A program made the translations under genes and the position numbers. Of a stretch of 64,000 bases of DNA, positions 13,697-28,584 are shown one piece after another. Origin of the DNA: Obrimoposthia wandeli (lineage: Eukaryota). The notes under the pieces are model-generated. The model was not told the DNA's origin. It did no database searches and saw only the letters and a list, made by a program, of their open reading frames with translations. How positions within the stretch are numbered: the first letter of the stretch is position 1; each line of letters starts with the position of its first letter. Location: NCBI GenBank assembly GCA_977020255.1, contig CDROCS010005958.1, forward strand, positions 1-64,000, in the 5' to 3' direction.

Positions 13697-14542
13697 TTAA
13701 CGTTGATGTCTACGTGACATAAATGCTAAACGCTCTAACATATGAACATCTTGCTCATTTTTCAGTAATGCGCCGTGTAAAGGCGGTATAGCGTTGGTTT
13801 GATCGGTGTTTTGTAAGGCGTCTAATGAAATACTATCTGCCATTAATAACTTAAGCCAATCAATTAATTCAGAAGTAGAAGGCTTCTTCTTAATCCCATT
13901 AACATCGCGTACTTGGAAGAAAATGTCTAATGCTTCTTTGACTAAATCATTTTGTAAATTGGGGTAATGTACATCTACTATCCGCTGCATCGTTTGACGA
14001 TCGGGAAATTGAATATAATGGAAGAAACAGCGACGTAAAAAAGCATCCGGGAGCTCTTTTTCATTATTAGATGTGATGATGATAATGGGCCGTTGGATCG
14101 CTTTAATTCGTTGGCCCGTCTCATACACACTAAACTCCATTTGATCGAGCTCAACGAGTAAATCATTAGGAAATTCAATATCTGCTTTATCTATTTCATC
14201 GATCAGTAACACAACTTGTTGGTCTGCTTCAAAGGCTTGCCATAGCATTCCTTTTTTAATGTAATTACCAATATCATGCACTCTTTCATCGCCTAACTGA
14301 GAGTCACGTAAACGAGAGACAGCATCATATTCATAAAGCCCTTGTTGTGCTTTAGTAGTGGACTTAATGTGCCAGCGTAATAATGGCTTGCCCAGTGCGC
14401 TAGCGACCTCTTCAGCGAGCATTGTTTTACCTGTGCCAGGTTCTCCTTTAATAAGCAGGGGTCGCTGTAGTGTAATTGCTGCATTTACTGCAATTTGCAA
14501 ATCGTTTGTGGCAACGTATTGCGCACTACCTTGAAATTTCAT
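13697..14542 (-). CDS. MoxR family AAA+ ATPase
   Basis: Walker A GEPGTGKT, Walker B LLIDEIDKAD and ELPDAFLRRC. Confidence 0.92.
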   Translation of the reverse strand: MKFQGSAQYVATNDLQIAVNAAITLQRPLLIKGEPGTGKTMLAEEVASALGKPLLRWHIKSTTKAQQGLYEYDAVSRLRDSQLGDERVHDIGNYIKKGMLWQAFEADQQVVLLIDEIDKADIEFPNDLLVELDQMEFSVYETGQRIKAIQRPIIIITSNNEKELPDAFLRRCFFHYIQFPDRQTMQRIVDVHYPNLQNDLVKEALDIFFQVRDVNGIKKKPSTSELIDWLKLLMADSISLDALQNTDQTNAIPPLHGALLKNEQDVHMLERLAFMSRRHQR

Positions 14543-18046: not shown

Positions 18047-18790
18047 TTATGCCGATTGCTTACCTTCAATGTTTCTTACAAAAAAGAATGTTTGCTCTAG
18101 ATTTTTTCGTTTATAAAGCATGGCAGGTCTTCTGCCAGTTTGTTTCATTTTTCCGGTCTCTTCTAGTATATCCGCACTTAACATACGACGCCGAAATGAT
18201 TTATGATCCATCTTATTACCTAAAATAATTTCGTATACGCTTTGTAGTTCATTTAATGAAAAGTTAGTGGGCATAAGATGTATTGGTAAGGAGGTATAGA
18301 GTACTTTGTTTTGTAGGCGCTCAGTACAGTCTTTTAGGATTTGGGCGTGGTCAAATGCCATGTTATCAATTGTTTGTGCCGATTCAATTTTTGACCATTT
18401 TATAGCTTGAGCACCGTTAGCGGCTTGTAAAACAATGTCTTCACTAGGTATTAAAGCAAAATAGACTGTGGTAACAGACCAGCCTCTAGGGTCTCGCTGT
18501 TTATTACCTATAGTTTTAAACTGCTCAAGGTAGGGGGTATTTACAGCGGTTTTTTCACTCAGTTTGCGTTTTGCCGTTGCTTCAAGGTCAGTATCACTTT
18601 CTAGATCAACAAAGCCACCGACTAACGACCAGCATCCTTTATATGGGTGTTCGGCTCGTTTGACTACTAATACATGTAATGCGCCATCAAAAACAGTATA
18701 AATGACATTATCGACACAAGTACTGGGGCGACTAAAAGCATTGGGGTCATAGTTGTTGAGGAACACTTGTTCTGTATCATTATGTTGCAA
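18047..18790 (-). CDS. nrtR: NrtR-type Nudix/wHTH transcriptional regulator of NAD metabolism
   Basis: N-terminal Nudix fold (RDPRGWSVT, MAFDH) plus C-terminal wHTH (ELQSVYEIILG...SFRRRML...GRRPAMLY); next to a Nampt gene; AAGGAG RBS before the TTG start. Confidence 0.88.
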   Translation of the reverse strand: MQHNDTEQVFLNNYDPNAFSRPSTCVDNVIYTVFDGALHVLVVKRAEHPYKGCWSLVGGFVDLESDTDLEATAKRKLSEKTAVNTPYLEQFKTIGNKQRDPRGWSVTTVYFALIPSEDIVLQAANGAQAIKWSKIESAQTIDNMAFDHAQILKDCTERLQNKVLYTSLPIHLMPTNFSLNELQSVYEIILGNKMDHKSFRRRMLSADILEETGKMKQTGRRPAMLYKRKNLEQTFFFVRNIEGKQSA

Positions 18791-18841: not shown

Positions 18842-18910
18842 AAGATAGATTCATTGAGATTTATTACAGTATTGCAGTAGTAAGGAGTTACTCTACTACT
18901 GCGCTACAGT

Positions 18911-20407
18911 TTAAAGCGTTTGTTGTAATTGCGCTTGTAAACGCTCTCTAATTTTACTCAAGTGTTGTTCTTTAGTTAGTATGCCATTTTCAAAGACCGT
19001 TTCAAAAGCACCTTGTTGTTCTTGTTCAGGTGTTTGTTGATCGTAAAGGACATAACTGTTCGCTTGCTCTTCAACCCTTAATAATCCTTTTGCCGATTTT
19101 TTTGTGCCGGAGTCGGTCTTTGGATCTTTGAAAATCTCTCTACGCTCACCGTTTACGACGCCGCTGGTGGCTTTCATGGCAAAGCCGTGATTGTCTCGGG
19201 TAACATACTGGTAAGTGTAAGAACCGACTCCTAGTACTACGTTACCTGAAGCAAATCCTTTAGCTTCTAGGCCCTGCATTATTAACTGGGCTCTTTCAAG
19301 CGTGATTGAATCACCATAGATTAAACCAATATGTTGGTCGAGCAATTTATAACCAGTAGCGGTTTGTACACCGCCAAAAATATCCCATAAACATTGAATA
19401 GCACCTTTATTTTCAGGGCTACCTTTAGCAGCGTTAGCATCGCCACATATTATTTTCACAGGGTCGCCACTGTCTGGACGAATCACTACTTTACCATCAC
19501 GTGCGAGCACGTCGTCTTTTAAGATAGCTAAAAACTCAGTCACAACTTGCCAAAAATCCCAAGTATCAGAGACAATGGATACAATGCCTTGAGGATATGT
19601 TTCATTAATCAAGCGCTTAAAAGTAGCAAGTTCACCTTCTTGCATCCCCATGCACATCACAGAGTGTTCAGTCGCTGGTACTGAAAATCCAACGGGTTGC
19701 TGGGATACATCTGCGAAATAATAGTCTTCTAGCATATCAATGGCAGGTACTGTATCTGTGCCGTAAAATGAAGTTAAGTGTGCAGCGCCGCTAAGTGCTG
19801 AATCTTGTAAGCTTGATAACCCCCTAAAAGAAAAATCGTGTGCTTGAAAGGGAACAAACTCTAAATCGGTTCCTGTTTTTAGTGCATATTTTGTTAAAAG
19901 CCTTTTATATTCAAATGCAGTAGTCGCTGAGGTAATTGGCTTCCATAAATAGCATGAAATGACGGACTCGATATAATTAGTTAACCAAAAGAAGTCAGGG
20001 TGGGTATTTACCACCGTTAATACCGGTACGCCAATAGGAACACGTGCGCCCTCTGCAAGCGCTTTAATCTTGATCGGTAAATAAGCTAAGTCGTGCAATG
20101 CCTCAATATGTTCGACAGCAATTGCATCGGTGCCTAGTGCATAATCCATACGTCTTTTATATGCAGAGACTACTTTATTTTTATCTTTGTTAAAAAACTG
20201 CTCATTCCAAACATCAATCAAGAAGTTTTTTAAGAAATATTGTAAACCAAACATAACGATTTTATTTTCATGTCCCTCTTCGATATATTTTGCCAAACGG
20301 TTACTGCGAGCAGTGAAGTTTGAATACACCTCAGTGGTGCCTTTTGGGTATTGATTTCTGTGGTCTGCTTTATAAAAATCTATTGCTGTTAAGGGGTTGA
20401 TGTTCAT
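18911..20407 (-). CDS. nadV: Nicotinamide phosphoribosyltransferase family protein (NadV/Nampt; possibly Namat-like)
   Basis: IDFYKADH, HDFSFRG, SVPATEHSV, SIVSDTWD, VIRPDSGDP, IYGDSIT, GVGSYTYQ and KDPKTDSGTKKSAKG motifs. Confidence 0.9.
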   Translation of the reverse strand: MNINPLTAIDFYKADHRNQYPKGTTEVYSNFTARSNRLAKYIEEGHENKIVMFGLQYFLKNFLIDVWNEQFFNKDKNKVVSAYKRRMDYALGTDAIAVEHIEALHDLAYLPIKIKALAEGARVPIGVPVLTVVNTHPDFFWLTNYIESVISCYLWKPITSATTAFEYKRLLTKYALKTGTDLEFVPFQAHDFSFRGLSSLQDSALSGAAHLTSFYGTDTVPAIDMLEDYYFADVSQQPVGFSVPATEHSVMCMGMQEGELATFKRLINETYPQGIVSIVSDTWDFWQVVTEFLAILKDDVLARDGKVVIRPDSGDPVKIICGDANAAKGSPENKGAIQCLWDIFGGVQTATGYKLLDQHIGLIYGDSITLERAQLIMQGLEAKGFASGNVVLGVGSYTYQYVTRDNHGFAMKATSGVVNGERREIFKDPKTDSGTKKSAKGLLRVEEQANSYVLYDQQTPEQEQQGAFETVFENGILTKEQHLSKIRERLQAQLQQTL

Positions 20408-20408
20408 G

Positions 20409-21218
20409 TTATTTCTCCTTAATTATGCTTAAAAACTGGGTGTCTATCGCATCGCTTTGTAAAAAACTGTGGTAACAATAAATATGTTTGAAATACGGCT
20501 TTAAACTATTCAATCCTTTTGAAAAAATCCCGTGTGTCACATAAAGATATAAGTCTTTAGCGCCGGCCTCTTTTAGTGCTTTCGCTAATTCGATAAAAGT
20601 ACGCCCGCCATCGCAGATATCATCAATAATAATAAAATTGTTTCCGCTTACGCCGGTGGGGATATGTGTGCTTTCAATTTTCCCGGTTTTAATATTACGT
20701 GTCTTCGTACAATAAATAGCGTTAACATTTAATGTTTCACTCAATTCACGTGTTTTAGCGGTTGCTCCTAAATCAGGTGAAACTAATACAAGCTTATTCG
20801 CTTTTATTACGTCAGATACAATACTATCGGGCAAAATGTTCGCTTGAGTAATAGCGATGCAATTATTCACTAGATCTTCGGTTACTTTTGAATGGGGATC
20901 ATAAATAGTGACACTTTTGCAATCTAAGGTATTAATTAGCCTAGCCATTACAGCTATTGCGAATGCTTCGCCCTCATTGCACACCCTGTCTTGGCGAGCG
21001 TAGGGAAAATATGGAATAGTTAAGTTAACCTGAGCCATTGGTTGTTTTTGTCTAATTGCATTTACGACCATCAACAAACGCATGACATCATCAGATGCAT
21101 ATAAATAAGCGGTAATATTAACTTCATCCGTAATATTTATGTCTGCGATACTTATATGACATTCACCGCCGCTAAAATTAAAATATTCAATCGGTTTATT
21201 GTTTACTTGAATGCTCAT
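20409..21218 (-). CDS. Short ribose-phosphate pyrophosphokinase-like protein (Prs/Adps-like)
   Basis: FSGGE, PYFPYARQDR, DPHS, SPDLGA, IIDDICDGGRTF and VTHGIFSKG motifs; only 269 aa and lacking the canonical Prs N-terminus; 1 bp from the Nampt start. Confidence 0.85.
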   Translation of the reverse strand: MSIQVNNKPIEYFNFSGGECHISIADINITDEVNITAYLYASDDVMRLLMVVNAIRQKQPMAQVNLTIPYFPYARQDRVCNEGEAFAIAVMARLINTLDCKSVTIYDPHSKVTEDLVNNCIAITQANILPDSIVSDVIKANKLVLVSPDLGATAKTRELSETLNVNAIYCTKTRNIKTGKIESTHIPTGVSGNNFIIIDDICDGGRTFIELAKALKEAGAKDLYLYVTHGIFSKGLNSLKPYFKHIYCYHSFLQSDAIDTQFLSIIKEK

Positions 21219-21258
21219 GTTCGCTCCTTGGTTATTAATGGCTTAGTGCCTTTTATTA

Positions 21259-21279
21259 ATAGTGTCACAGGGCCACTAA
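21259..21279. promoter_or_regulatory. NrtR operator
   Basis: aTAGTGTC-acagg-GCCACTAa, a 7-N5-7 palindrome resembling the gammaproteobacterial NrtR box TAGTGTC-N5-GACACTA, about 40 bp upstream of the prs-like start. Confidence 0.72.
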
Positions 21280-21343
21280 TTAAGTCAAGTAATAGTTTAA
21301 GTAAAAATAGTGAAGACAACGTAAGAGGTGCATATGAGAAGTA

Positions 21344-21461: not shown

Positions 21462-21510
21462 CGCAGCTGTTGTTAGTAAAGTTTACTTTCCTTTACTAAC
21501 AACAGCTGCG
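21462..21510. repeat. Perfect 20-bp inverted repeat (terminator-like hairpin)
   Basis: CGCAGCTGTTGTTAGTAAAG-tttactttc-CTTTACTAACAACAGCTGCG, just past the stop of the 21546..22406 gene. Confidence 0.8.
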
Positions 21511-21545: not shown

Positions 21546-22406
21546 TTAGTTATAGCTTGCTTGGTTATTGCTGAATTGAAAATCTTGGTTGAATAATCGC
21601 ATCTGCTCATTTCTTACAGACTCTAATTCACAGTGGAAGTAGCGAGTTGATTTAGAGTCTAAATAACTATAATACTTTTTATCGAATTCATAGCCGTTTC
21701 TTTGAAAAGCCATTAAATCCTTGTATTCCTGTTGTGTAAGATCATCACCACATTTAGATATAATCCATTCTGAGTAACCCGCTGGCGGAGAGCTGGTCAT
21801 ATTATATATTTGGTTTTTTTGAACATACGCCATAGACCCGGATGGCACAGAGAACATTTTGTTCACTAATTGAGGTTTTGCACCCATGCTCAACATATAA
21901 TTTTCCACTATTGCGCGCAGCGTGCTGTATTTTTGGGTGGCTTCTTGAATATTAAGTTTAGAGAAATAATCTCTATTAAACTTAGGGCGGTGCAAGCCAA
22001 TATCACCCGCTGTATTTTCGCTTTTATATAAACTACCCAATAAGATGAATACGCAGGCGCTATTGCATTTTTTAGATTCAAATCTTAGTAAGTACTTTCT
22101 GGCAAAAGACCCTATTTTAAGAGCCTCCATAACATTACCACCACGAGAATCTAAGGATAACTGATAGGGAACATCTCTTTGGCGATTGATGATTTTTAAC
22201 ATCTTTTTGTAATCGCCTTTTTTAATTTCTCCCTTTATATTGAGCTCAGAAAAAGGGCTTTCTCCGGTGTAATAAATATTTGCGGCAAAGCTGATTGAAG
22301 GCGTAAGTAAATAAAGCAATCCGGTTGCTATTAGTGTACTTTTTACCTTCTTTAAAAAAGTGTATTTGAGCTTTGGCTCACTGTTGTCGCTAAATTGCAT
22401 GTGCAT
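21546..22406 (-). CDS. Exported protein with ClpP/crotonase-like fold (COG3904-like)
   Basis: Signal-like segment, then GEIKKGD, LSLDSRGGNVMEALKIG, CNSACVFILLG and IGLHRP. Confidence 0.62.
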   Translation of the reverse strand: MHMQFSDNSEPKLKYTFLKKVKSTLIATGLLYLLTPSISFAANIYYTGESPFSELNIKGEIKKGDYKKMLKIINRQRDVPYQLSLDSRGGNVMEALKIGSFARKYLLRFESKKCNSACVFILLGSLYKSENTAGDIGLHRPKFNRDYFSKLNIQEATQKYSTLRAIVENYMLSMGAKPQLVNKMFSVPSGSMAYVQKNQIYNMTSSPPAGYSEWIISKCGDDLTQQEYKDLMAFQRNGYEFDKKYYSYLDSKSTRYFHCELESVRNEQMRLFNQDFQFSNNQASYN

Positions 22407-22620: not shown

Positions 22621-24300
22621 ATGAAGTCGTTAATGTTTTATATGGCAGTATTTAGTTGGAAGTACATCATTAAATTGAAAGCACTACAAATCTCAAACCT
22701 TCGCTTCAATTTGATTATATCTGTTGCGTTAGTGTTGTTTTATAATCTTCCTTTGTGGCGGTTTTTGGGGCAATTAAATGACGGAATCTCTTGGGGCAGC
22801 GGGTTATTTTTAGCATCTTTTTTTCTGTTCTTAGTCACAGTGTTTAACTTTGTGCTAAACATTGTAAGTGTTAAATATATTACTAAGCCGTTGATCGTTA
22901 TTATTTTATTGTCGTCATCCTTAGCTGCCTATTTTATGAACGCTTACGGAATTGTTTTTGATAAAACGATGATCCGAAATACGTTACAAACAGATAGCAA
23001 AGAAGTACTCGATATATTAAGTCTGCCTTTATTTATAAATTTTGTTTTATTAGGGGCATTACCAAGTGTGTTAGTTATGTGTAGCAATATAACTTACAGA
23101 CCGTTTTTTAAAGAGTGTAAAGCACGACTTATAATAGCAATAGTCAGTGTGTTTGTTATTGTTTTAAATTTAGCGGTTTTTTACAAAGACTATTCATCTA
23201 CTTTTAGTAACAATAAAGAAATTCGTAATTTTATTTCCCCTTCTAGCTTTATTTATTACACCACAAGATATTTATCGGGTGCTGATGATCAAAACAGTGA
23301 GTCATTTAAAACATTGGCAGATGATGCAGTATTAAAACCGATATGGAGTGCGCAAAAGAAAAGGGTAGTGACTATAGTGGTGGTGGGTGAAACAGCCAGG
23401 GCGATGAACTTTTCAGTTAACGGCTATCACCGTGAAACTAACCCTAAACTAGCGAAGCAACCTATCATTAATTTTAAAGATACACACTCGTGTGGTACCT
23501 CTACAGCTGTGTCATTGCCTTGTATGTTTTCTCCTATGGTGCAAGCTGATTTTGATTCAGGCAAAGCGAAAAACTCGGAGAATATATTAGATATATTTCA
23601 GAAAATGGGCTTTGATGTGCTTTGGCGCGATAACAATTCTGGATGTAAAGGGGTATGCGACAGAGTAAAGAAACAAGGGGTGAGCAGTTTTAGAACGGAT
23701 CAATTTTGTGAAGGGAATAAATGCTTTGATGAAGCGTTATTATCTGATTTGGATCACTATTTAGGTGCCCATTCAAACAATGCTGTGATCGTGCTACATC
23801 AAAATGGTAGTCATGGACCTGCATACTCGAAACGTTATCCACAGCACTTTGAAATATTTACCCCCGTTTGTTCATCATCTCATTTACCTAGTTGTGAGAA
23901 AGCCAGTATTTTAAATAGTTACGATAATACGATTGTGTACACAGACCATTTTTTGCATCAAACAATTGAGTTTTTAAAACAGCGCAGCGATAAATACACG
24001 ACAGCAATGCTGTATTTATCTGATCATGGGGAGTCTCTTGGGGAAAATAATATTTTTCTACATGGATTACCTTATTACATGGCACCAGAAACTCAATATA
24101 AAGTGCCATTTTTTATCTGGTTATCCAAAGATTTTAAGCAGAACTTTAAACTGGATGAAGAGTGCTTAATGGCTAAACAAAATAAAGCGGTTAGTCATGA
24201 TTATTTATTTCACTCTCTTTTAGGTTTGCTGAATATTGAAACATCAGTGTATCAAAATCAGCTAGATGTATTTGCACAATGTAAAGCAGCTGCACTTTGA
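22621..24300 (+). CDS. eptA: Lipid A phosphoethanolamine transferase
   Basis: 5 N-terminal TMs; VVGETARA, SCGTSTAVSLPCMFS (catalytic Thr), HQNGSHGPAY, YDNTIVYTD, SDHGESLGE and LHG motifs. Confidence 0.93.
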   Translation: MKSLMFYMAVFSWKYIIKLKALQISNLRFNLIISVALVLFYNLPLWRFLGQLNDGISWGSGLFLASFFLFLVTVFNFVLNIVSVKYITKPLIVIILLSSSLAAYFMNAYGIVFDKTMIRNTLQTDSKEVLDILSLPLFINFVLLGALPSVLVMCSNITYRPFFKECKARLIIAIVSVFVIVLNLAVFYKDYSSTFSNNKEIRNFISPSSFIYYTTRYLSGADDQNSESFKTLADDAVLKPIWSAQKKRVVTIVVVGETARAMNFSVNGYHRETNPKLAKQPIINFKDTHSCGTSTAVSLPCMFSPMVQADFDSGKAKNSENILDIFQKMGFDVLWRDNNSGCKGVCDRVKKQGVSSFRTDQFCEGNKCFDEALLSDLDHYLGAHSNNAVIVLHQNGSHGPAYSKRYPQHFEIFTPVCSSSHLPSCEKASILNSYDNTIVYTDHFLHQTIEFLKQRSDKYTTAMLYLSDHGESLGENNIFLHGLPYYMAPETQYKVPFFIWLSKDFKQNFKLDEECLMAKQNKAVSHDYLFHSLLGLLNIETSVYQNQLDVFAQCKAAAL

Positions 24301-24400
24301 CTTGCTAAGCCTAGCGCAGCGCAGCTTGTTTTGTTAGCTATTAGATAGAACAAGGTTTCATTTATATTAACGTTTAGAAGTAGTTCCCTTTGAGGTTTAT

Positions 24401-25084
24401 ATGCATGTATTAGTTGTTGATGATGAAAGTGATATTCTTTCTACAATAATTGACCAATTAGAAATTAATGAGATAGTGGCTGATTGCGCGATAAATGGAC
24501 AGCAAGCGATTAGTTTAGTCGCTAAAAATAACTACGATGTTATCGTGTTAGATGTAATGATGCCGGGTATAGATGGTCTTGAAACTTGTCGCCAATTACG
24601 CGCAAGTGGTTGTACGGTGCCGATTATTTTCCTAACAGCGCGCGATACGCTACCAGATAAAATTAGTGGCTTTAAAGTAGGCGCTGATGACTATCTAGTT
24701 AAACCTTTTTCAATGGATGAGCTGCTGTGTCGGGTGCAAGCGTTAGGTAAAAGGGTTTCTCGTCAGGCGTTAAGTCATTTAACGTATGCTGATTTACATA
24801 TTGATTTAGACAGCATTCAAGTTAAACGTGCGAACAAGCCGCTTGCGCTAAACCAAATCCAATATAAATTATTACGCTGTTTGATGATACAAGCGCCAAA
24901 AGTTGTTACTAGAGAGCAATTAGAGTTTGCTGTTTGGCAAGGAGAAACACCTGACAGTGATGTGTTACGCAGTCATTTATATCAATTACGCCAAATAATT
25001 GATAAGCCGTTTAGTTTCCAGATGTTAGAAACCGTTAGAGGACAAGGTTATCGCTTGTTAAGTCCTAGTAAAAATCAAGAGTAA
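24401..25084 (+). CDS. OmpR-family response regulator
   Basis: VVDD, DVMMPG, FLTARD, GADDYLVKPF and ETVRGQGY. Confidence 0.93.
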   Translation: MHVLVVDDESDILSTIIDQLEINEIVADCAINGQQAISLVAKNNYDVIVLDVMMPGIDGLETCRQLRASGCTVPIIFLTARDTLPDKISGFKVGADDYLVKPFSMDELLCRVQALGKRVSRQALSHLTYADLHIDLDSIQVKRANKPLALNQIQYKLLRCLMIQAPKVVTREQLEFAVWQGETPDSDVLRSHLYQLRQIIDKPFSFQMLETVRGQGYRLLSPSKNQE

Positions 25085-25089
25085 AAAAT

Positions 25090-26292
25090 ATGAAGTTGAA
25101 TTATAGACAGCGATTTACCTTAGTTATTAGTGCTTATACTTTTTTCTTAGTTTTCGTGGCACTTACCGCATTATGGATCGCGTTTGAAATAATAGAAAGT
25201 GGCCATGATCGCGAACTAGAGCAAGCGTTTAATCAGAAAATAACTACCGCCTTAGCAGATAGCTATCAAGATCAGAGCAGTGTTAAAACGGATATTTTTG
25301 ACTTGTATTATGATAATGATCAGTTACCAGAGCAGTTAAAAAAGTACACTCAGTTTGGCTTTCAAGAAATAGCTTTGGATGAACAGCTAATTGTTGGTCA
25401 ACACCCTAAAAGCGGCCAAAAATATTATCTAGTTTTTCACCTTAATGTTAATGAGGGTTTTTTAGAGCAAGAGCTACTGGATATTTTATTTGTGATCGCC
25501 GCTGCATTTTTAGCCACTATTATGGTTGTATATTTAGTTTTATATATGGCTAGAAAGTTGACTGCGCCGGTGCTGGAATTACAAAATGTGGTAAAGAATT
25601 TAGATATTGATTCAGACCAATTGCCGCTATTAGATAGAGAAGATGAAATAGGTGAGCTAAGTAACCATTTTAGTGAATTAGTTTCAAAAATGCGGGCCTT
25701 TGCTCAAAGGGAAAGAGATTTTACTCGGTTTTCTAGCCATGAATTACGTACCCCTATTACGGTAATGAGGGGGAATTTTGATTTGTTGGATAAAACCATA
25801 CCGAAAAATGCATTAAACTCACGCGTATTACAGCGCATGGATACGGCAATTAACCGGATGGGTAGCTTGGTTGAAGTGTTTTTATGGTTGGGGCGAGATC
25901 ATAAAGATAAGAATGAGTTTAAAACAGAGGCAGTTAACAGTAGCCAACTCAGCAGCATGATAGAGCAAGTGCTTGATACGCTTTCGCAGGTAGATAGAAA
26001 GCATATAGATGTCCAATTAGATGCTATTCAATGGCAATTAAAACCAGTCATGTTGTCGATGTTGATTGATAATTTATTGCGAAATGCTCTACAGCATGGA
26101 GATAAAAATATTCAAATATATGCGCATAAAGATCAGCTGTGTATCAGCAATCAAACCACCAAAGAGGTTAATTTTGTGCAACAAGGTATAGGTTTACAAA
26201 TAGTGCAAAGAATCTGTGAAGCAAATAATTGGCATTTAATGATAGAGTCAAATGATTTACAGTTTAAAGCGAGCTTAGTCTTTATAGATTAG
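25090..26292 (+). CDS. Sensor histidine kinase (HAMP-HisKA-HATPase)
   Basis: Two TMs, HAMP (DEIGELSNHF), H-box SHELRTP, N-box NLLRNALQHG and GIGL. Confidence 0.88.
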   Translation: MKLNYRQRFTLVISAYTFFLVFVALTALWIAFEIIESGHDRELEQAFNQKITTALADSYQDQSSVKTDIFDLYYDNDQLPEQLKKYTQFGFQEIALDEQLIVGQHPKSGQKYYLVFHLNVNEGFLEQELLDILFVIAAAFLATIMVVYLVLYMARKLTAPVLELQNVVKNLDIDSDQLPLLDREDEIGELSNHFSELVSKMRAFAQRERDFTRFSSHELRTPITVMRGNFDLLDKTIPKNALNSRVLQRMDTAINRMGSLVEVFLWLGRDHKDKNEFKTEAVNSSQLSSMIEQVLDTLSQVDRKHIDVQLDAIQWQLKPVMLSMLIDNLLRNALQHGDKNIQIYAHKDQLCISNQTTKEVNFVQQGIGLQIVQRICEANNWHLMIESNDLQFKASLVFID

Positions 26293-26304
26293 GGTTTATT
26301 CGCG

Positions 26305-27318
26305 CTACTTTATTATTTCTGACGATAAATCATCGCTAAAACTTTCACACCTTAGAGTAATTAACGAGGAGGTAGGGTTAAGGCGAAGCCCAAGTGTAAC
26401 CGCTTTTAATAAGTGATTCTTTGAGCCAAGCACCTGATAATCCTCATCTGTAAGTCCCGTATCTTGCTCTAACCTTTTTAAAAAGAAGTCACCATTGTGG
26501 CTATAGATTTTATCACCCACAATTGGCAAATTAAGGTGTGCTAAGTGTGCTCTAATTTGGTGTTTTCTTCCCGTAAAAAGCTGGCATTCAATAAGTGAGT
26601 ATTCGCCTTGGGTTTTTAAAAGTCTAAAGTGAGTTTTACAGTCTTTAGGTTTTTTATAAAGCTCTCTAGCTAGCAGCGGGTCGACAACAAACATCTTACA
26701 ACGAATAGCGCTGTCTAGCCGTTCTGCCAGCTGTGTTTCACAAGTGTATTCAGACCATTGAGGTACACCTTTAACAATGGCGTGGTAGGTTTTAACTTCA
26801 ATTAATTGCTTGAGATTTTTCTTATGCTTGCTATCGCTTTGCTTATTTTTGGCTATTAATATTAAGCCTGAAGTTTCAATATCTAAGCGATGTAATAGCT
26901 GAGCACTGTAAAAAGGCGTTTGCCTTCTTATCAGGCCTATTAATGTGTCGTATAAGTTACGAGTCGTTCTACTGACAGCAAGAGGTGCCGGTTTGTATGC
27001 GGCGAGTATTTCATCATTTTGCCAAATGGTGTGCCACTGTAGATTTATTTTTTGCTCAAAATGATTGGCAAGGGTAATTGATAGCCTTTGCCCTGCACCA
27101 ATTAGAGTATCTGGTTGCGCTATTTCACCATCGAGCGTTAATACATGTGAAGATAACCAAGCAGTCAGCTCTTGCTCAGATAACAACGGCATATGGTTTT
27201 GCAGATAATCAAAAATTGTGTCGTTTGTTGATAGTAAAATCTCTGAGAAAATAGGGTAGGTTAACTCATAGTGGCTATCAGCTGTTGGCTTATTATTACT
27301 ATTTAAATCATGTTGCAT
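26305..27318 (-). CDS. RluA-family pseudouridine synthase
   Basis: HRLDIETSGL and TGRKHQIRAHLAHLNLPIVGDKIY. Confidence 0.9.
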   Translation of the reverse strand: MQHDLNSNNKPTADSHYELTYPIFSEILLSTNDTIFDYLQNHMPLLSEQELTAWLSSHVLTLDGEIAQPDTLIGAGQRLSITLANHFEQKINLQWHTIWQNDEILAAYKPAPLAVSRTTRNLYDTLIGLIRRQTPFYSAQLLHRLDIETSGLILIAKNKQSDSKHKKNLKQLIEVKTYHAIVKGVPQWSEYTCETQLAERLDSAIRCKMFVVDPLLARELYKKPKDCKTHFRLLKTQGEYSLIECQLFTGRKHQIRAHLAHLNLPIVGDKIYSHNGDFFLKRLEQDTGLTDEDYQVLGSKNHLLKAVTLGLRLNPTSSLITLRCESFSDDLSSEIIK

Positions 27319-27540
27319 ACTTAATGCTACCTTGCATAGCTAAAAGAGGGTTGGCTATTATAAACGTAAGATATATGACTAAACAGTGAAGAATGATAAA
27401 TAAACTAAATCGAGCAATATTCTAAAACAGTTGTCTGCTAATCAGTTTGCTTGCTATTATTCGTGCTCAAAGTGTTTAAGATCTCTCGCTGATTTATCAT
27501 TTGTTATTTAACTTAAGTTTACTAATAAAGTACTTTATTC

Positions 27541-28584
27541 ATGCCCAAGCTAACTGCCTATTTTAGTGTGTTTTTATGCCAACTTTCACTCGCCACATTT
27601 GCAATGGCTGGTGAAGACCCTTGGACTTTAAATTTACATTTTGAAAATGACTTATTTGCAGAGACAGATTTAAATTATACCAACGGTGTAAGAGCATCTT
27701 GGGTGTCTCCTGATATGTCTGATTTTTTAGCGAATCAGCAGCAAACATATACCTGGCTTAACCAAGTAAACCAGTTATTAGAACCCCTACACCCATCTAT
27801 TGAATCAGGTGAAAAAGTTCATAGAAATATTGTGGTTAGTGTAGGGCAGTTGATGTTTACCCCTCAAGATAAAAAGAAGACAAAGCTTGATAAAACAGAT
27901 AGACCTTATGCTGGTTGGTTGTACGGTGGTGTTGGCTATCAAGCGCGGACAAGCGATAGATTGCACAGTTTTGAGCTAAATGTTGGGGTGGTAGGTCCTG
28001 CTGCTTTAGCAAAAGAGACGCAAGATTTAATACATGATATTCGCTCTATTAGCCGTTTTGAAGGTTGGGATAATCAATTAGATAATGAATTAGGTCTTCA
28101 ACTTGTGTTTGAGCGTAAACGACGATTTAAACCATTAAAAGGCAAAATATTTAATCATTTAGAAACAGACTTAATCACCCATTGGGGTGGTAGTCTCGGT
28201 AATGTGGCGACTTATGTAAATGCGGGAGCCGAGTGGCGTATAGGTTGGTCTCTTCCTGCTGATTTTGGTACCTCAACTCTTAGGCCAGGTGGCGATAGTA
28301 ATAACCCTGGATTAACTAACCCATTGAATCGAGCGTTACAAGTACACGGTTTTATTGCCAGTGATGCCCGTTTAGTGGCGCATAATATATTTTTAGATGG
28401 CAATACCTTTTCAAATAGTCACAGTGTAGATAAGAAAAATTTGGTAGCAGATATTACCGTAGGCGTAAGCACTACCTATCAGCGTTGGAATATAAGTTAC
28501 TCGCATGTATATCGAACAAAAGAGTTTAAGGGGCAGAGCGAAGCGCAAAAATACGGCTCTCTCTCTTTAAGCTATAGTTATTAA
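27541..28584 (+). CDS. Lipid A 3'-O-deacylase LpxR family outer-membrane protein
   Basis: Signal peptide; ENDLFAETDLNYTNG, QLMFTP, DRPYAGWL, GWDNQL, NIFLDGN and FKGQ; terminal aromatic residue. Confidence 0.82.
   Translation: MPKLTAYFSVFLCQLSLATFAMAGEDPWTLNLHFENDLFAETDLNYTNGVRASWVSPDMSDFLANQQQTYTWLNQVNQLLEPLHPSIESGEKVHRNIVVSVGQLMFTPQDKKKTKLDKTDRPYAGWLYGGVGYQARTSDRLHSFELNVGVVGPAALAKETQDLIHDIRSISRFEGWDNQLDNELGLQLVFERKRRFKPLKGKIFNHLETDLITHWGGSLGNVATYVNAGAEWRIGWSLPADFGTSTLRPGGDSNNPGLTNPLNRALQVHGFIASDARLVAHNIFLDGNTFSNSHSVDKKNLVADITVGVSTTYQRWNISYSHVYRTKEFKGQSEAQKYGSLSLSYSY

What the first reader, a model, noticed from the sequence alone, without database searches (positions are those of the whole stretch)
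18911..21218. Chromosomal Prs-like + Nampt-like pair that may be an NARP1-type ADP-ribose-to-NAD+ pathway rather than classical salvage
Seen: a short (269 aa) PRPP-synthetase homolog sits 1 bp from a Nampt homolog. No NMN adenylyltransferase (nadM/nadR/nadD) is in the locus, and the pair is tied to NrtR. Established: NrtR repressors respond to ADP-ribose, and prs-nadV operons under NrtR have been read as PRPP supply plus Nampt. The phage NARP1 pathway uses a Prs homolog (Adps: ADPR to ADPR-PP) and a Nampt homolog (Namat) to rebuild NAD+ in two steps without an adenylyltransferase. Inference: the short form (FSGGE start, ARQDRVCNEGEAF) looks to me like the phage type. The operon could recycle ADPR left by NAD+ cleavage (sirtuins, NADase defences, toxins), and its inducer would then be its own substrate.
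Basis: partly seen in the sequence, partly recalled or inferred. Interest (0 to 1): 0.78.

Follow-up and report, generated by a model that had tools for sequence, protein, structure and literature searches.

The report
Chromosomal NrtR-controlled NARP1-type NAD+ rebuilding operon
This bacterial three-gene operon looks like the chromosomal version of the phage NARP1 pathway, which rebuilds NAD+ from ADP-ribose and nicotinamide, and it sits under a repressor of the family that ADP-ribose releases from DNA; such modules are already known in bacteria, so this is a good new example, not a new kind.

Summary
On the minus strand lie a 269-aa Prs-like gene (20409-21218), a 498-aa Nampt-like gene one base downstream (18911-20407), and an NrtR gene 120 bp further on (18047-18790).

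- **Nampt-like protein.** It scores 566 bits to the SPbetaL1 Namat crystal structure, against 237 for human NAMPT. It carries the Namat clamp motif (GSYTYQYVTRD) and the R40 equivalent. It falls on the Namat side of a 100/100 split from 14 Nampts.
- **Prs-like protein.** It has the Adps hallmarks: no C-terminal alpha11-12, a de-basified RF loop, a TGxI hairpin and a DDICDGGRTF PP loop. It scores 259 bits to a phage-only Adps profile, against 95 to a Prs profile.
- **Regulation.** A conserved 21-bp NrtR-type palindrome lies just downstream of a -35-like hexamer.
- **Context.** The flanks are ordinary chromosomal genes.
- **Relatives.** Thirteen of 17 related bacterial loci have NrtR adjacent.

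No enzyme activity was tested. Namat keeps PRPP activity in vitro, and relatives carry PncC and NadD, so classical salvage is not excluded.

Chromosomal bacterial NARP1 and NrtR-regulated prs-nadV operons are each published. I found no paper that links the two. Verdict: a new member of a known kind.

The parts
20409..21218 (-). adps-like gene (269 aa): short Prs-family protein, predicted ADP-ribose pyrophosphokinase (ADPR + ATP -> ADPR-PP + AMP)
   Evidence: Pfam and TIGR01251 match covers only positions 25-252 of 309. Keeps R87, H121, D161, K185, D212, D213, D216. Has the Adps-type I194, C215, F221, the TGxI hairpin and the DDICDGGRTF PP loop. The basic RF loop and the C-terminal alpha11-12 are missing. 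Scores 259 bits to a phage-only Adps HMM against 95 to a Prs HMM. Groups with ICP1 Adps.
18911..20407 (-). namat-like gene (498 aa): predicted nicotinamide ADP-ribose transferase (ADPR-PP + nicotinamide -> NAD+ + PPi)
   Evidence: 566 bits to PDB 9W5X/9W5W (SPbetaL1 Namat), against 237 to human NAMPT and 218 to 7YQO. SCH motif GSYTYQYVTRD, the R40 equivalent and S190 are present, and all 21 NAD+-contact positions are kept or conservatively changed. On the Namat side of a 100/100 split.
18047..18790 (-). nrtR: Nudix-related winged-helix repressor, predicted to be released from DNA by ADP-ribose
   Evidence: NUDIX + NrtR_WHD. 196 bits over the full length to S. oneidensis NrtR, PDB 3GZ5. The Nudix box reads RKLSEKTAV in place of REUxEExGU, so two of the three catalytic Glu are lost (read from the translation). 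TTG start with a GGAG ribosome-binding site.
21259..21279 (-). primary NrtR-type operator: 21-bp imperfect palindrome TTAGTGGCCCTGTGACACTAT, 61 nt upstream of the adps ATG
   Evidence: The same palindrome (about ATAgTGgC-N5-GcCACTAT) occurs at -54 to -83 upstream of adps in L019, L017, L029 and L018, and in 2-3 copies in L023 and L077. It is the only zero-mismatch match to TRRTGKC-N5-GMCAYYA in 64 kb. It fits the 21-bp palindrome described for NrtR.
21235..21255 (-). possible second, weaker NrtR half-conserved site (TAAAAGGCACTAAGCCATTAA) in tandem with the first
   Evidence: 6/10 palindromic positions, with the GGC-N5-GCC core kept. Tandem sites were shown to be functional in S. oneidensis. 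This is inference only.
21283..21288 (-). -35-like hexamer TTGACT of the operon promoter; the operator starts 3 nt downstream of it
   Evidence: Read from the sequence. TTGACA or TTGAAA sits in the same position relative to the operator in L019, L017 and L029. The -10 is uncertain, and the consensus scan did not call this promoter.
21462..21510 (-). 20-bp perfect-stem hairpin ending the upstream gene (21546-22406), which isolates the operon promoter from it
   Evidence: Read from the sequence.

Best explanation
The three genes form a chromosomal, NrtR-repressed NARP1 module. When NAD+ is cleaved to ADP-ribose and nicotinamide, ADP-ribose binds NrtR and releases it from the 21-bp operator at the promoter. 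The short Prs-like enzyme (Adps) then transfers pyrophosphate from ATP to the terminal ribose of ADP-ribose, giving ADPR-PP. The Nampt-like enzyme (Namat) replaces that pyrophosphate with nicotinamide, giving NAD+ directly, with no NMN intermediate and no adenylyltransferase. Shown here: family and clade membership, diagnostic residues, the operator and its conservation, and the chromosomal context. Inferred: the substrates, the response to ADP-ribose, and the physiological role, which is most likely housekeeping recycling of ADPR from NAD+-consuming enzymes.
For: Namat:
- PDB scores are 566 bits to 9W5X/9W5W against 237 and 218 to Nampts. The identity of 9W5X/9W5W was confirmed.
- The SCH consensus GSX-phi-X-phi-X-phi-TRD is matched exactly, and R40, S190 and all NAD+ contacts are kept, whereas 14 Nampts have G190, GGxLLQ and a short ESRGG loop.
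- The careful ML tree splits Nampt from Namat at 100/100, with the window among bacterial pairs and ICP1.

Adps:
- ICP1 numbering was verified at 23 of 23 positions.
- The Adps-specific I194, C215, F221, the TGxI hairpin, the PP loop, the lost basic RF loop and the lost C-terminal helices are all present. These match the features defined.
- Profile contrast is 259 against 95 bits.

Neighbourhood:
- Every Namat-type gene I examined except one (the solo G347 copy) has a short Prs-like gene beside it or, in L024, about 2 kb away.
- None of the Nampt-type genes does, and three Nampt-type genes sit next to NadM.

NrtR:
-.
- ADPR releases the S. oneidensis orthologue from the prs-nadV operator.
- The same adps-namat-nrtR order is found in 6 of 6 sampled homologue contigs.

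Precedent: Paenibacillus foliorum chromosomal NARP1 is active in vitro and in vivo.
Against: - No activity was measured for these proteins.
- The window Adps is only 29-39% identical to the characterised Adps enzymes.
- The Prs outgroup in the tree was narrow: seven gammaproteobacterial class I enzymes.
- Namat retains about half of human Nampt's PRPP-dependent NMN synthesis in vitro. S. oneidensis NadV expressed in E. coli yields NMN.
- Related genomes that hold the pair carry PncC and NadD, so an NMN route to NAD+ exists.
- NrtR scores below the NF050029 cut-off (279 against 400).
Confidence: 0.75

Rival explanations
1. Classical salvage as read in 2008. The short Prs is a dedicated PRPP synthase, NadV makes NMN from PRPP and nicotinamide, and NMN reaches NAD+ through PncC, NadD and NadE. 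ADPR is only the signal that NAD+ is being consumed.
For: Rodionov 2008 interpreted prs-nadV in this way. Namat enzymes make NMN from PRPP in vitro. S. oneidensis NadV gives NMN in E. coli. PncC was found in 4 of the 5 related pair-holding genomes searched, and NadD in all four gammaproteobacterial ones.
Against: The genomes that hold the pair already have a full-length Prs, and the 2008 authors themselves called the second copy unexplained. The short form has lost the Prs regulatory loop and C-terminus and carries the Adps donor-site residues. The Nampt-like protein has the adenine clamp that is dispensable for PRPP chemistry. When both substrates are offered, SPbetaL1 Namat makes only NAD+.
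Confidence: 0.12
2. Dual use. The pair runs NARP1 when ADPR is abundant, and Namat also draws on cellular PRPP to salvage nicotinamide to NMN. Both routes would contribute in vivo.
For: Retained PRPP activity of Namat. PncC and NadD in related genomes. One related genome (G062) keeps both a Nampt-type and a Namat-type gene, which suggests the two are not fully redundant.
Against: In competition assays Namat gave only NAD+. I found no data on relative flux in bacteria.
Confidence: 0.1
3. A remnant of a phage or mobile-element counter-defence cassette with no host function.
For: NARP1 was discovered in phages, and 1567 phage records carry a homologue of the Prs-like protein.
Against: No phage or mobile-element genes were found among the 34 of the window's 49 ORFs of at least 150 aa that were scanned, and GC content is typical of the surroundings. 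A host-type repressor and operator are conserved with the pair across many chromosomal contigs of up to 934 kb. All catalytic residues are intact.
Confidence: 0.03

Closest known systems
Phage NARP1 (Adps + Namat of Bas63, SPbetaL1, FADO, ICP1; Osterman et al. preprint 10.1101/2024.02.11.579819; Lan 2026 PMC12774641; Liu 2026 PMC13586617)
   Same: Same two-gene unit in the same order. The Namat is 54-55% identical to the SPbetaL1, FADO and ICP1 enzymes, with an identical or near-identical clamp motif. The Adps shares the family's truncations and donor-site residues.
   Different: It is chromosomal, with no phage context. It carries a dedicated NrtR repressor and operator, which none of the 9 phage loci showed within 2.5-3 kb. 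The Adps is only 29-39% identical to the characterised enzymes.
Chromosomal bacterial NARP1 (Paenibacillus foliorum pfAdps/pfNamat, Lan 2026; AntiDefenseFinder survey, 469 occurrences in Acinetobacter, 10.1101/2024.08.21.608784)
   Same: A non-mobile bacterial Adps-Namat pair. An Acinetobacter chromosomal copy (L029) is 64.5% identical in Namat and has the same adps-namat-nrtR order.
   Different: Those reports, as far as I read them, do not discuss regulation. Here the NrtR gene and operator are part of the unit. The window's lineage is distinct, with best Adps homologues at 62-68% identity.
NrtR-regulated prs-nadV operons (S. oneidensis, Acinetobacter sp. ADP1, Chromobacterium, Cytophaga; Rodionov 2008 PMC2330246)
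   Same: Same gene order as ADP1 (prs-nadV-nrtR). The NrtR is homologous to the S. oneidensis protein (3GZ5). The operator is a 21-bp palindrome at the promoter.
   Different: These operons were read as PRPP supply plus Nampt. The sequence evidence here says the two enzymes are of Adps and Namat type.
Classical Nampt/NadV with NadM (nadM-nadV; phage KVP40 NARP2)
   Same: Same protein superfamily and the same catalytic core (F189, D215, R306 equivalents).
   Different: About 30-34% identity. Nampts have G190, GGxLLQ and a short loop in place of the clamp. Three of the Nampt-type genes examined sit next to NadM, and none sits next to a short Prs.

Membership tests
Namat (nicotinamide ADP-ribose transferase) | SCH motif GSX-phi-X-phi-X-phi-TRD with aromatic X residues | tested here: met
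   GSYTYQYVTRD, identical to ICP1. The motif is absent from all 14 Nampts aligned.
Namat (nicotinamide ADP-ribose transferase) | SCL loop longer than in Nampt, with an Arg/Lys/Tyr stacking residue (SPbetaL1 R40) | tested here: met
   Arg at the R40 column, and the loop is about 10-12 residues longer than the Nampt ESRGG loop.
Namat (nicotinamide ADP-ribose transferase) | Conserved catalytic core (F189, D215, R306, D308 and others) | tested here: met
   All are present. SPbetaL1 numbering was verified at 21 of 21 positions.
Namat (nicotinamide ADP-ribose transferase) | Clade with characterised Namats, apart from Nampt | tested here: met
   100/100 split in the careful ML tree of 35 proteins. 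PDB scores are 566 against 237 bits.
Namat (nicotinamide ADP-ribose transferase) | Prefers ADPR-PP over PRPP | not testable with these tools
   Needs an enzyme assay.
Adps (ADPR-PP synthetase) | Loss of the C-terminal alpha11-alpha12 module of PRPS | tested here: met
   59 residues follow the F223 column, against 80-85 in seven Prs. The terminal segment (E. coli [20 protein letters not shown]) is absent.
Adps (ADPR-PP synthetase) | Remodelled PP loop and donor site (I194, C215, F221 in ICP1) | tested here: met
   I, C and F are present. The loop reads DDICDGGRTF, against DDMIDTGGTL in Prs.
Adps (ADPR-PP synthetase) | Degenerate RF loop and allosteric ADP site | tested here: met
   RQDRVCNEGEA in place of RQDRRVRSARV.
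Adps (ADPR-PP synthetase) | Catalytic Lys185 and acceptor residues R87, H121, D161, D212, D213, D216 | tested here: met
   All are conserved. They are shared with Prs, so they do not discriminate between the two.
Adps (ADPR-PP synthetase) | Phylogenetic or profile placement with characterised Adps | tested here: met
   Short forms split from 7 Prs at 100 SH-aLRT, and the window is in a 10-row group with ICP1 at 92. Phage-only HMM gives 259 bits against 95 for the Prs HMM. Caveat: the outgroup was narrow.
Adps (ADPR-PP synthetase) | Pyrophosphorylates ADPR, not ribose-5-phosphate | not testable with these tools
   Needs LC-MS of the reaction products.
NrtR repressor | N-terminal Nudix-like domain plus C-terminal NrtR winged helix | tested here: met
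   PF00293 and PF21906. 196 bits over the full length to 3GZ5.
NrtR repressor | 21-bp palindromic operator upstream of the regulated operon | tested here: met
   Site at 21259-21279, conserved in position and sequence in at least 7 related loci and unique in the window at zero mismatches.
NrtR repressor | Score above the NCBIfam NF050029 equivalog cut-off | tested here: not met
   279.4 bits against a cut-off of 400. It is the best hit by far, but the protein is too divergent for that model.
NrtR repressor | DNA binding relieved by ADP-ribose | not testable with these tools
   Shown for the S. oneidensis orthologue only.
Housekeeping class I Prs | Full-length match to Prs equivalog models, with the basic RF loop and C-terminal helices | tested here: not met
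   No equivalog cut-off is reached, and TIGR01251 covers 25-252 of 309. The loop and C-terminus are lost. Four of the five related pair-holding genomes searched carry a separate full-length Prs; the 1-Mb G002 MAG showed none.
Classical Nampt / NadV | GGxLLQ helix, G190, short SCL-equivalent loop; often next to NadM | tested here: not met

The most novel reading that the evidence does not exclude
All NrtR-controlled 'prs-nadV' operons of Proteobacteria (this one, and those of Acinetobacter, Shewanella and relatives) are substrate-induced NAD+ re-ligation modules. ADP-ribose would be both inducer and substrate. That would give bacteria a housekeeping cycle that reverses NAD+ glycohydrolysis in two steps. 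Phage NARP1 pairs such as ICP1's, which nests among NrtR-linked bacterial pairs in both trees, would have been captured from this bacterial pathway.
Probability: 0.45. Interest if true: 0.7.

Novelty: new member of a known kind. Interest (0 to 1): 0.5.

Why it matters
If the assignment holds, the annotations 'ribose-phosphate pyrophosphokinase' and 'nicotinate/nicotinamide phosphoribosyltransferase' are wrong for this operon and for thousands of homologues. One search found more than 7,500 similar short Prs proteins.

It would also settle a point left open in 2008: why NrtR regulons hold a second prs next to nadV. It would give the published but unexplained bacterial NARP1 modules a regulatory logic that can be tested at once, namely induction by their own substrate.

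It bears on phage defence too. A host that can rebuild NAD+ from ADPR could blunt or reset its own NAD+-depleting defences.

Tried and rejected
- **Census of NAD genes in the window's own genome.** Not possible. G000 is a 1.35-Gb, 6912-contig mixed assembly with dozens of Prs and adenylyltransferase genes from many organisms. I used related genomes instead.
- **Adps structures.** They are not in the PDB copy, so the best hits for the Prs-like protein were ordinary Prs at 85 bits. The comparison had to rest on the ICP1 sequence and the residue numbers in Liu 2026.
- **Genome-contig scan.** It returned only 3 full relatives, all from MAGs: Midichloriaceae, Coxiellaceae and an unnamed bacterium. 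The organism therefore remains unnamed. Its gene content (Edd, Glk, LpxR, EptA, RND efflux) is that of a free-living Gram-negative.
- **Exact-sequence look-up of the window Namat.** Nothing found.
- **Sorci 2010 JBC paper on Acinetobacter NadV.** Not held.
- **Argument from the absence of an adenylyltransferase.** Considered and set aside. No NadM or NadR was found in four related gammaproteobacterial genomes that hold the pair, but PncC and NadD are present.
- **Consensus promoter scan.** It did not call the operon promoter.
- **Earlier scan notes near this place.** They concerned unrelated features.
Full report
**What is there**

Three ORFs lie on the minus strand:
- a 269-aa ORF at 20409-21218;
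- a 498-aa ORF at 18911-20407, starting one base after the first ORF's stop;
- a 247-aa ORF at 18047-18790, 120 bp further downstream.

Pfam assigns them to three families:
- Prs domains: Pribosyltran_N, Pribosyltran, Pribosyl_synth;
- Nampt domains: NAMPT_N, NAPRTase;
- NUDIX plus the NrtR winged helix.

I scanned 34 of the window's 49 ORFs of at least 150 aa with Pfam, including all 20 that start within about 10 kb of the operon. The neighbours are ordinary chromosomal genes:
- EamA, a LysR regulator, an acetyltransferase, an AAA/VWA pair and RluF-like pseudouridine synthases;
- an MFS transporter, EptA with a two-component system, and LpxR;
- Edd, Glk and an RND efflux set.

None is a phage or mobile-element gene, and none has an adenylyltransferase domain. 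GC content is uniform across the locus.

**The Nampt-like protein is a Namat by sequence**

Against the PDB it scores as follows:
- 566 bits to 9W5X/9W5W;
- 475 bits to 9KE8;
- 237 bits to human NAMPT;
- 218 bits to 7YQO, which its depositors call a 'Pre-B cell enhancing factor related protein'.

Entries 9W5X and 9W5W are the SPbetaL1 Namat structures of Lan et al. 2026.

That paper defines a Namat-specific 'selectivity clamp':
- a helix with the consensus GSX-phi-X-phi-X-phi-TRD, whose aromatic residues stack on the adenine of NAD+;
- a longer beta1-beta2 loop that supplies an Arg, Lys or Tyr.

I checked that my copy of SPbetaL1 Namat carries all 21 residues the paper names at the stated positions, then tabulated those positions across 35 proteins. 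The window protein reads GSYTYQYVTRD. It has Arg at the R40 column and Ser at 190, and it keeps every NAD+ contact or changes it conservatively. All 14 Nampt-type proteins have G190, GGxLLQ and a short ESRGG loop.

A careful ML tree separates the 14 Nampts from 21 Namat-side proteins at 100/100. The Nampts are two KVP40/T4-like phage enzymes and 12 bacterial ones. The Namat side includes SPbetaL1, FADO, ICP1 and a FelixO1 relative of Bas63. The window protein is:
- sister to a Midichloriaceae MAG copy (100/99);
- next to a Coxiellaceae MAG copy (75% identity);
- then close to an Acinetobacter chromosomal copy (64.5% identity).

**The Prs-like protein is an Adps by sequence**

Liu et al. 2026 solved the ICP1 Adps (UniProt F1D1Q1). 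They list its ADPR and ATP contacts, a remodelled PP loop and catalytic hairpin, a degenerate regulatory loop, and loss of the C-terminal alpha11-alpha12 module as the family signature. My ICP1 ORF228 translation carries all 23 named residues at the stated positions.

The window protein keeps the residues shared with Prs: R87, H121, D161, K185, D212, D213 and D216. In addition it has the states found in phage and bacterial short forms but not in seven housekeeping Prs:
- I194, where Prs have S or A;
- C215, where Prs have I or V;
- F221, where Prs have L or I;
- a one-residue-longer hairpin with TGxI;
- the PP loop DDICDGGRTF, against DDMIDTGGTL in Prs;
- RQDRVCNEGEA in place of the basic RQDRRVRSARV;
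- about 25 fewer C-terminal and 17 or more fewer N-terminal residues.

An HMM built only from nine phage Adps scores the window protein at 259 bits. Housekeeping Prs score 107-128 bits against it. A Prs HMM gives the window protein 95 bits.

The quick tree puts all short forms apart from Prs (100 SH-aLRT). It places the window in a group with ICP1 Adps (92). The outgroup in that tree was narrow, so I give it less weight than the residue and profile evidence.

**Neighbourhood rule**

I sampled 401 species of the class that holds the Coxiellaceae relative. Sixteen have a NadV-family gene:
- four genomes (G001, G052, G187, G062) hold a Namat-type gene with a short Prs directly beside it;
- one genome (G347) has a solo Namat-like gene with an altered clamp;
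- twelve genomes, G062 among them, hold a Nampt-type gene with no short Prs nearby. Three of these genes sit directly next to a bifunctional NadM-Nudix gene.

The four gammaproteobacterial genomes with the pair also have a normal full-length Prs.

**NrtR control**

The 247-aa protein matches S. oneidensis NrtR (PDB 3GZ5) over its whole length at 196 bits. Rodionov et al. 2008 showed two things for that protein:
- it binds two tandem sites upstream of prs-nadV;
- it is released from them by ADPR.

In the window protein the Nudix box has lost two of its three catalytic glutamates (read from the translation), as expected for a sensor.

Sixty-one bases upstream of the adps ATG lies a 21-bp imperfect palindrome, TTAGTGGCCCTGTGACACTAT. 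It starts three bases after a TTGACT -35-like hexamer. The same palindrome occurs in a similar position (54-83 nt upstream of adps) in the Coxiellaceae, Midichloriaceae and Acinetobacter loci and in one other. It occurs in two or three copies in two further loci. It is the only exact match to the derived pattern in the 64-kb window. A weaker tandem copy may follow at 21235-21255.

The adps-namat-nrtR order recurs in six of six homologue contigs I sampled, on contigs of up to 934 kb. Overall, 13 of 17 bacterial pair loci have NrtR adjacent. None of nine phage loci has it within 2.5-3 kb. The sample is not independent, because six of the loci were picked from the closest homologues.

**Mechanism proposed**

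NAD+ cleavage yields ADPR and nicotinamide. ADPR lifts NrtR from the promoter. Adps makes ADPR-PP from ADPR and ATP. Namat then joins nicotinamide to it, giving NAD+. The family assignments and the operator are shown here. The substrates, the induction and the role are inferred from characterised relatives.

**What weakens it**

- Nothing was assayed.
- Namat enzymes still make NMN from PRPP at about half the rate of human Nampt, and S. oneidensis NadV yields NMN in E. coli. Older biochemical evidence for 'NadV' activity in this clade is therefore compatible with either reading.
- Four related gammaproteobacterial genomes that hold the pair showed no NadM or NadR, but they do have NadD and PncC.

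**Novelty**

Three things are already published:
- Osterman et al. noted NARP1 in some bacteria outside prophages, and mentioned that ADPR regulates transcription in some bacteria.
- The AntiDefenseFinder preprint found NARP1 enriched in non-mobile chromosome, with 469 occurrences in Acinetobacter.
- Lan et al. showed a Paenibacillus chromosomal NARP1 to be active and called its role open.

Rodionov 2008 described prs-nadV under NrtR and called the second prs unexplained. In the papers I could search, none links NrtR to NARP1. The only paper that mentions both treats them separately.

The window is therefore a new member of a known kind. The explicit link to NrtR is a modest and readily testable addition.

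**Other points**

The window's assembly is a mixture of many organisms, so the host bacterium could not be named. The scan's earlier notes near this place concern other features and did not bear on this report.

Noticed in passing
G000 contigs C1154 (L022), C546 (L023), C5497 (L024), C5518 (L025): The same 1.35-Gb mixed assembly holds at least four more short-Prs + Namat-type sets on other bacterial contigs. Two have an adjacent NrtR (C1154 in the order nrtR-namat-adps; C546 divergent, with three operator copies). In C5497 the two genes lie about 2 kb apart.
   Followed up: partly
L017:6812-8320 (Midichloriaceae MAG, nearest relative of the window Namat): This copy has D215A at a catalytic position, Ser at the R40 column and a degenerate clamp (GSNAYQSVTRD), although the operator upstream is intact. 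That 1-Mb MAG showed no full-length Prs and has a stand-alone NadM-like NMNAT of 184 aa (L042). The copy may be decaying or may have changed function.
   Followed up: partly
L029 = CAKLQF020000015.1 45529-59004: The record is filed as 'Acinetobacter phage MD-2021a', but the stretch looks like ordinary Acinetobacter chromosome (iron ABC transporter, AraC, MetH-like gene, EmrAB) with prs-nadV-nrtR. Its NrtR is annotated there as a bifunctional NMN adenylyltransferase/ADP-ribose pyrophosphatase.
   Followed up: no
L099:9362-10051 (934-kb metagenomic contig): A TIR_2-domain protein lies about 1.3 kb downstream of nrtR in a homologous adps-namat-nrtR locus. It is a possible NAD+-cleaving neighbour of the ADPR-recycling operon.
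   Followed up: no
L075:4986-6464 (G347): A solo Namat-clade gene with an altered clamp (GAQTYQRNTRD) and no short Prs or NrtR nearby. It may be an intermediate or a reverted form.
   Followed up: no
window 18874-18902: A 9-bp-stem hairpin lies in the 120-bp gap between namat and nrtR, with no T-run after it. It may be a partial attenuator or a processing site. nrtR has its own GGAG ribosome-binding site and a TTG start.
   Followed up: no
window 13704-13722: A one-mismatch match to the operator pattern lies at the junction of the AAA and VWA genes. Seven of 100 shuffles gave as many matches, so it is probably chance.
   Followed up: no
window 21546-22406 (-): A 286-aa ORF directly upstream of the operon has a signal-peptide-like N-terminus and no Pfam family. 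It ends in a 20-bp perfect-stem hairpin at 21462-21510.
   Followed up: no
window 22621-28584: A lipid A remodelling cluster lies next to the operon: an EptA-type phosphoethanolamine transferase, a PmrAB-like response regulator and histidine kinase, and LpxR.
   Followed up: no
L031:2959-4740 and L038:3426-5210: The FelixO1 and Listeria phage WIL-2 Namat genes are about 100 aa longer (593-594 aa) and align to the window protein in two pieces. This points to an insertion within the enzyme.
   Followed up: no
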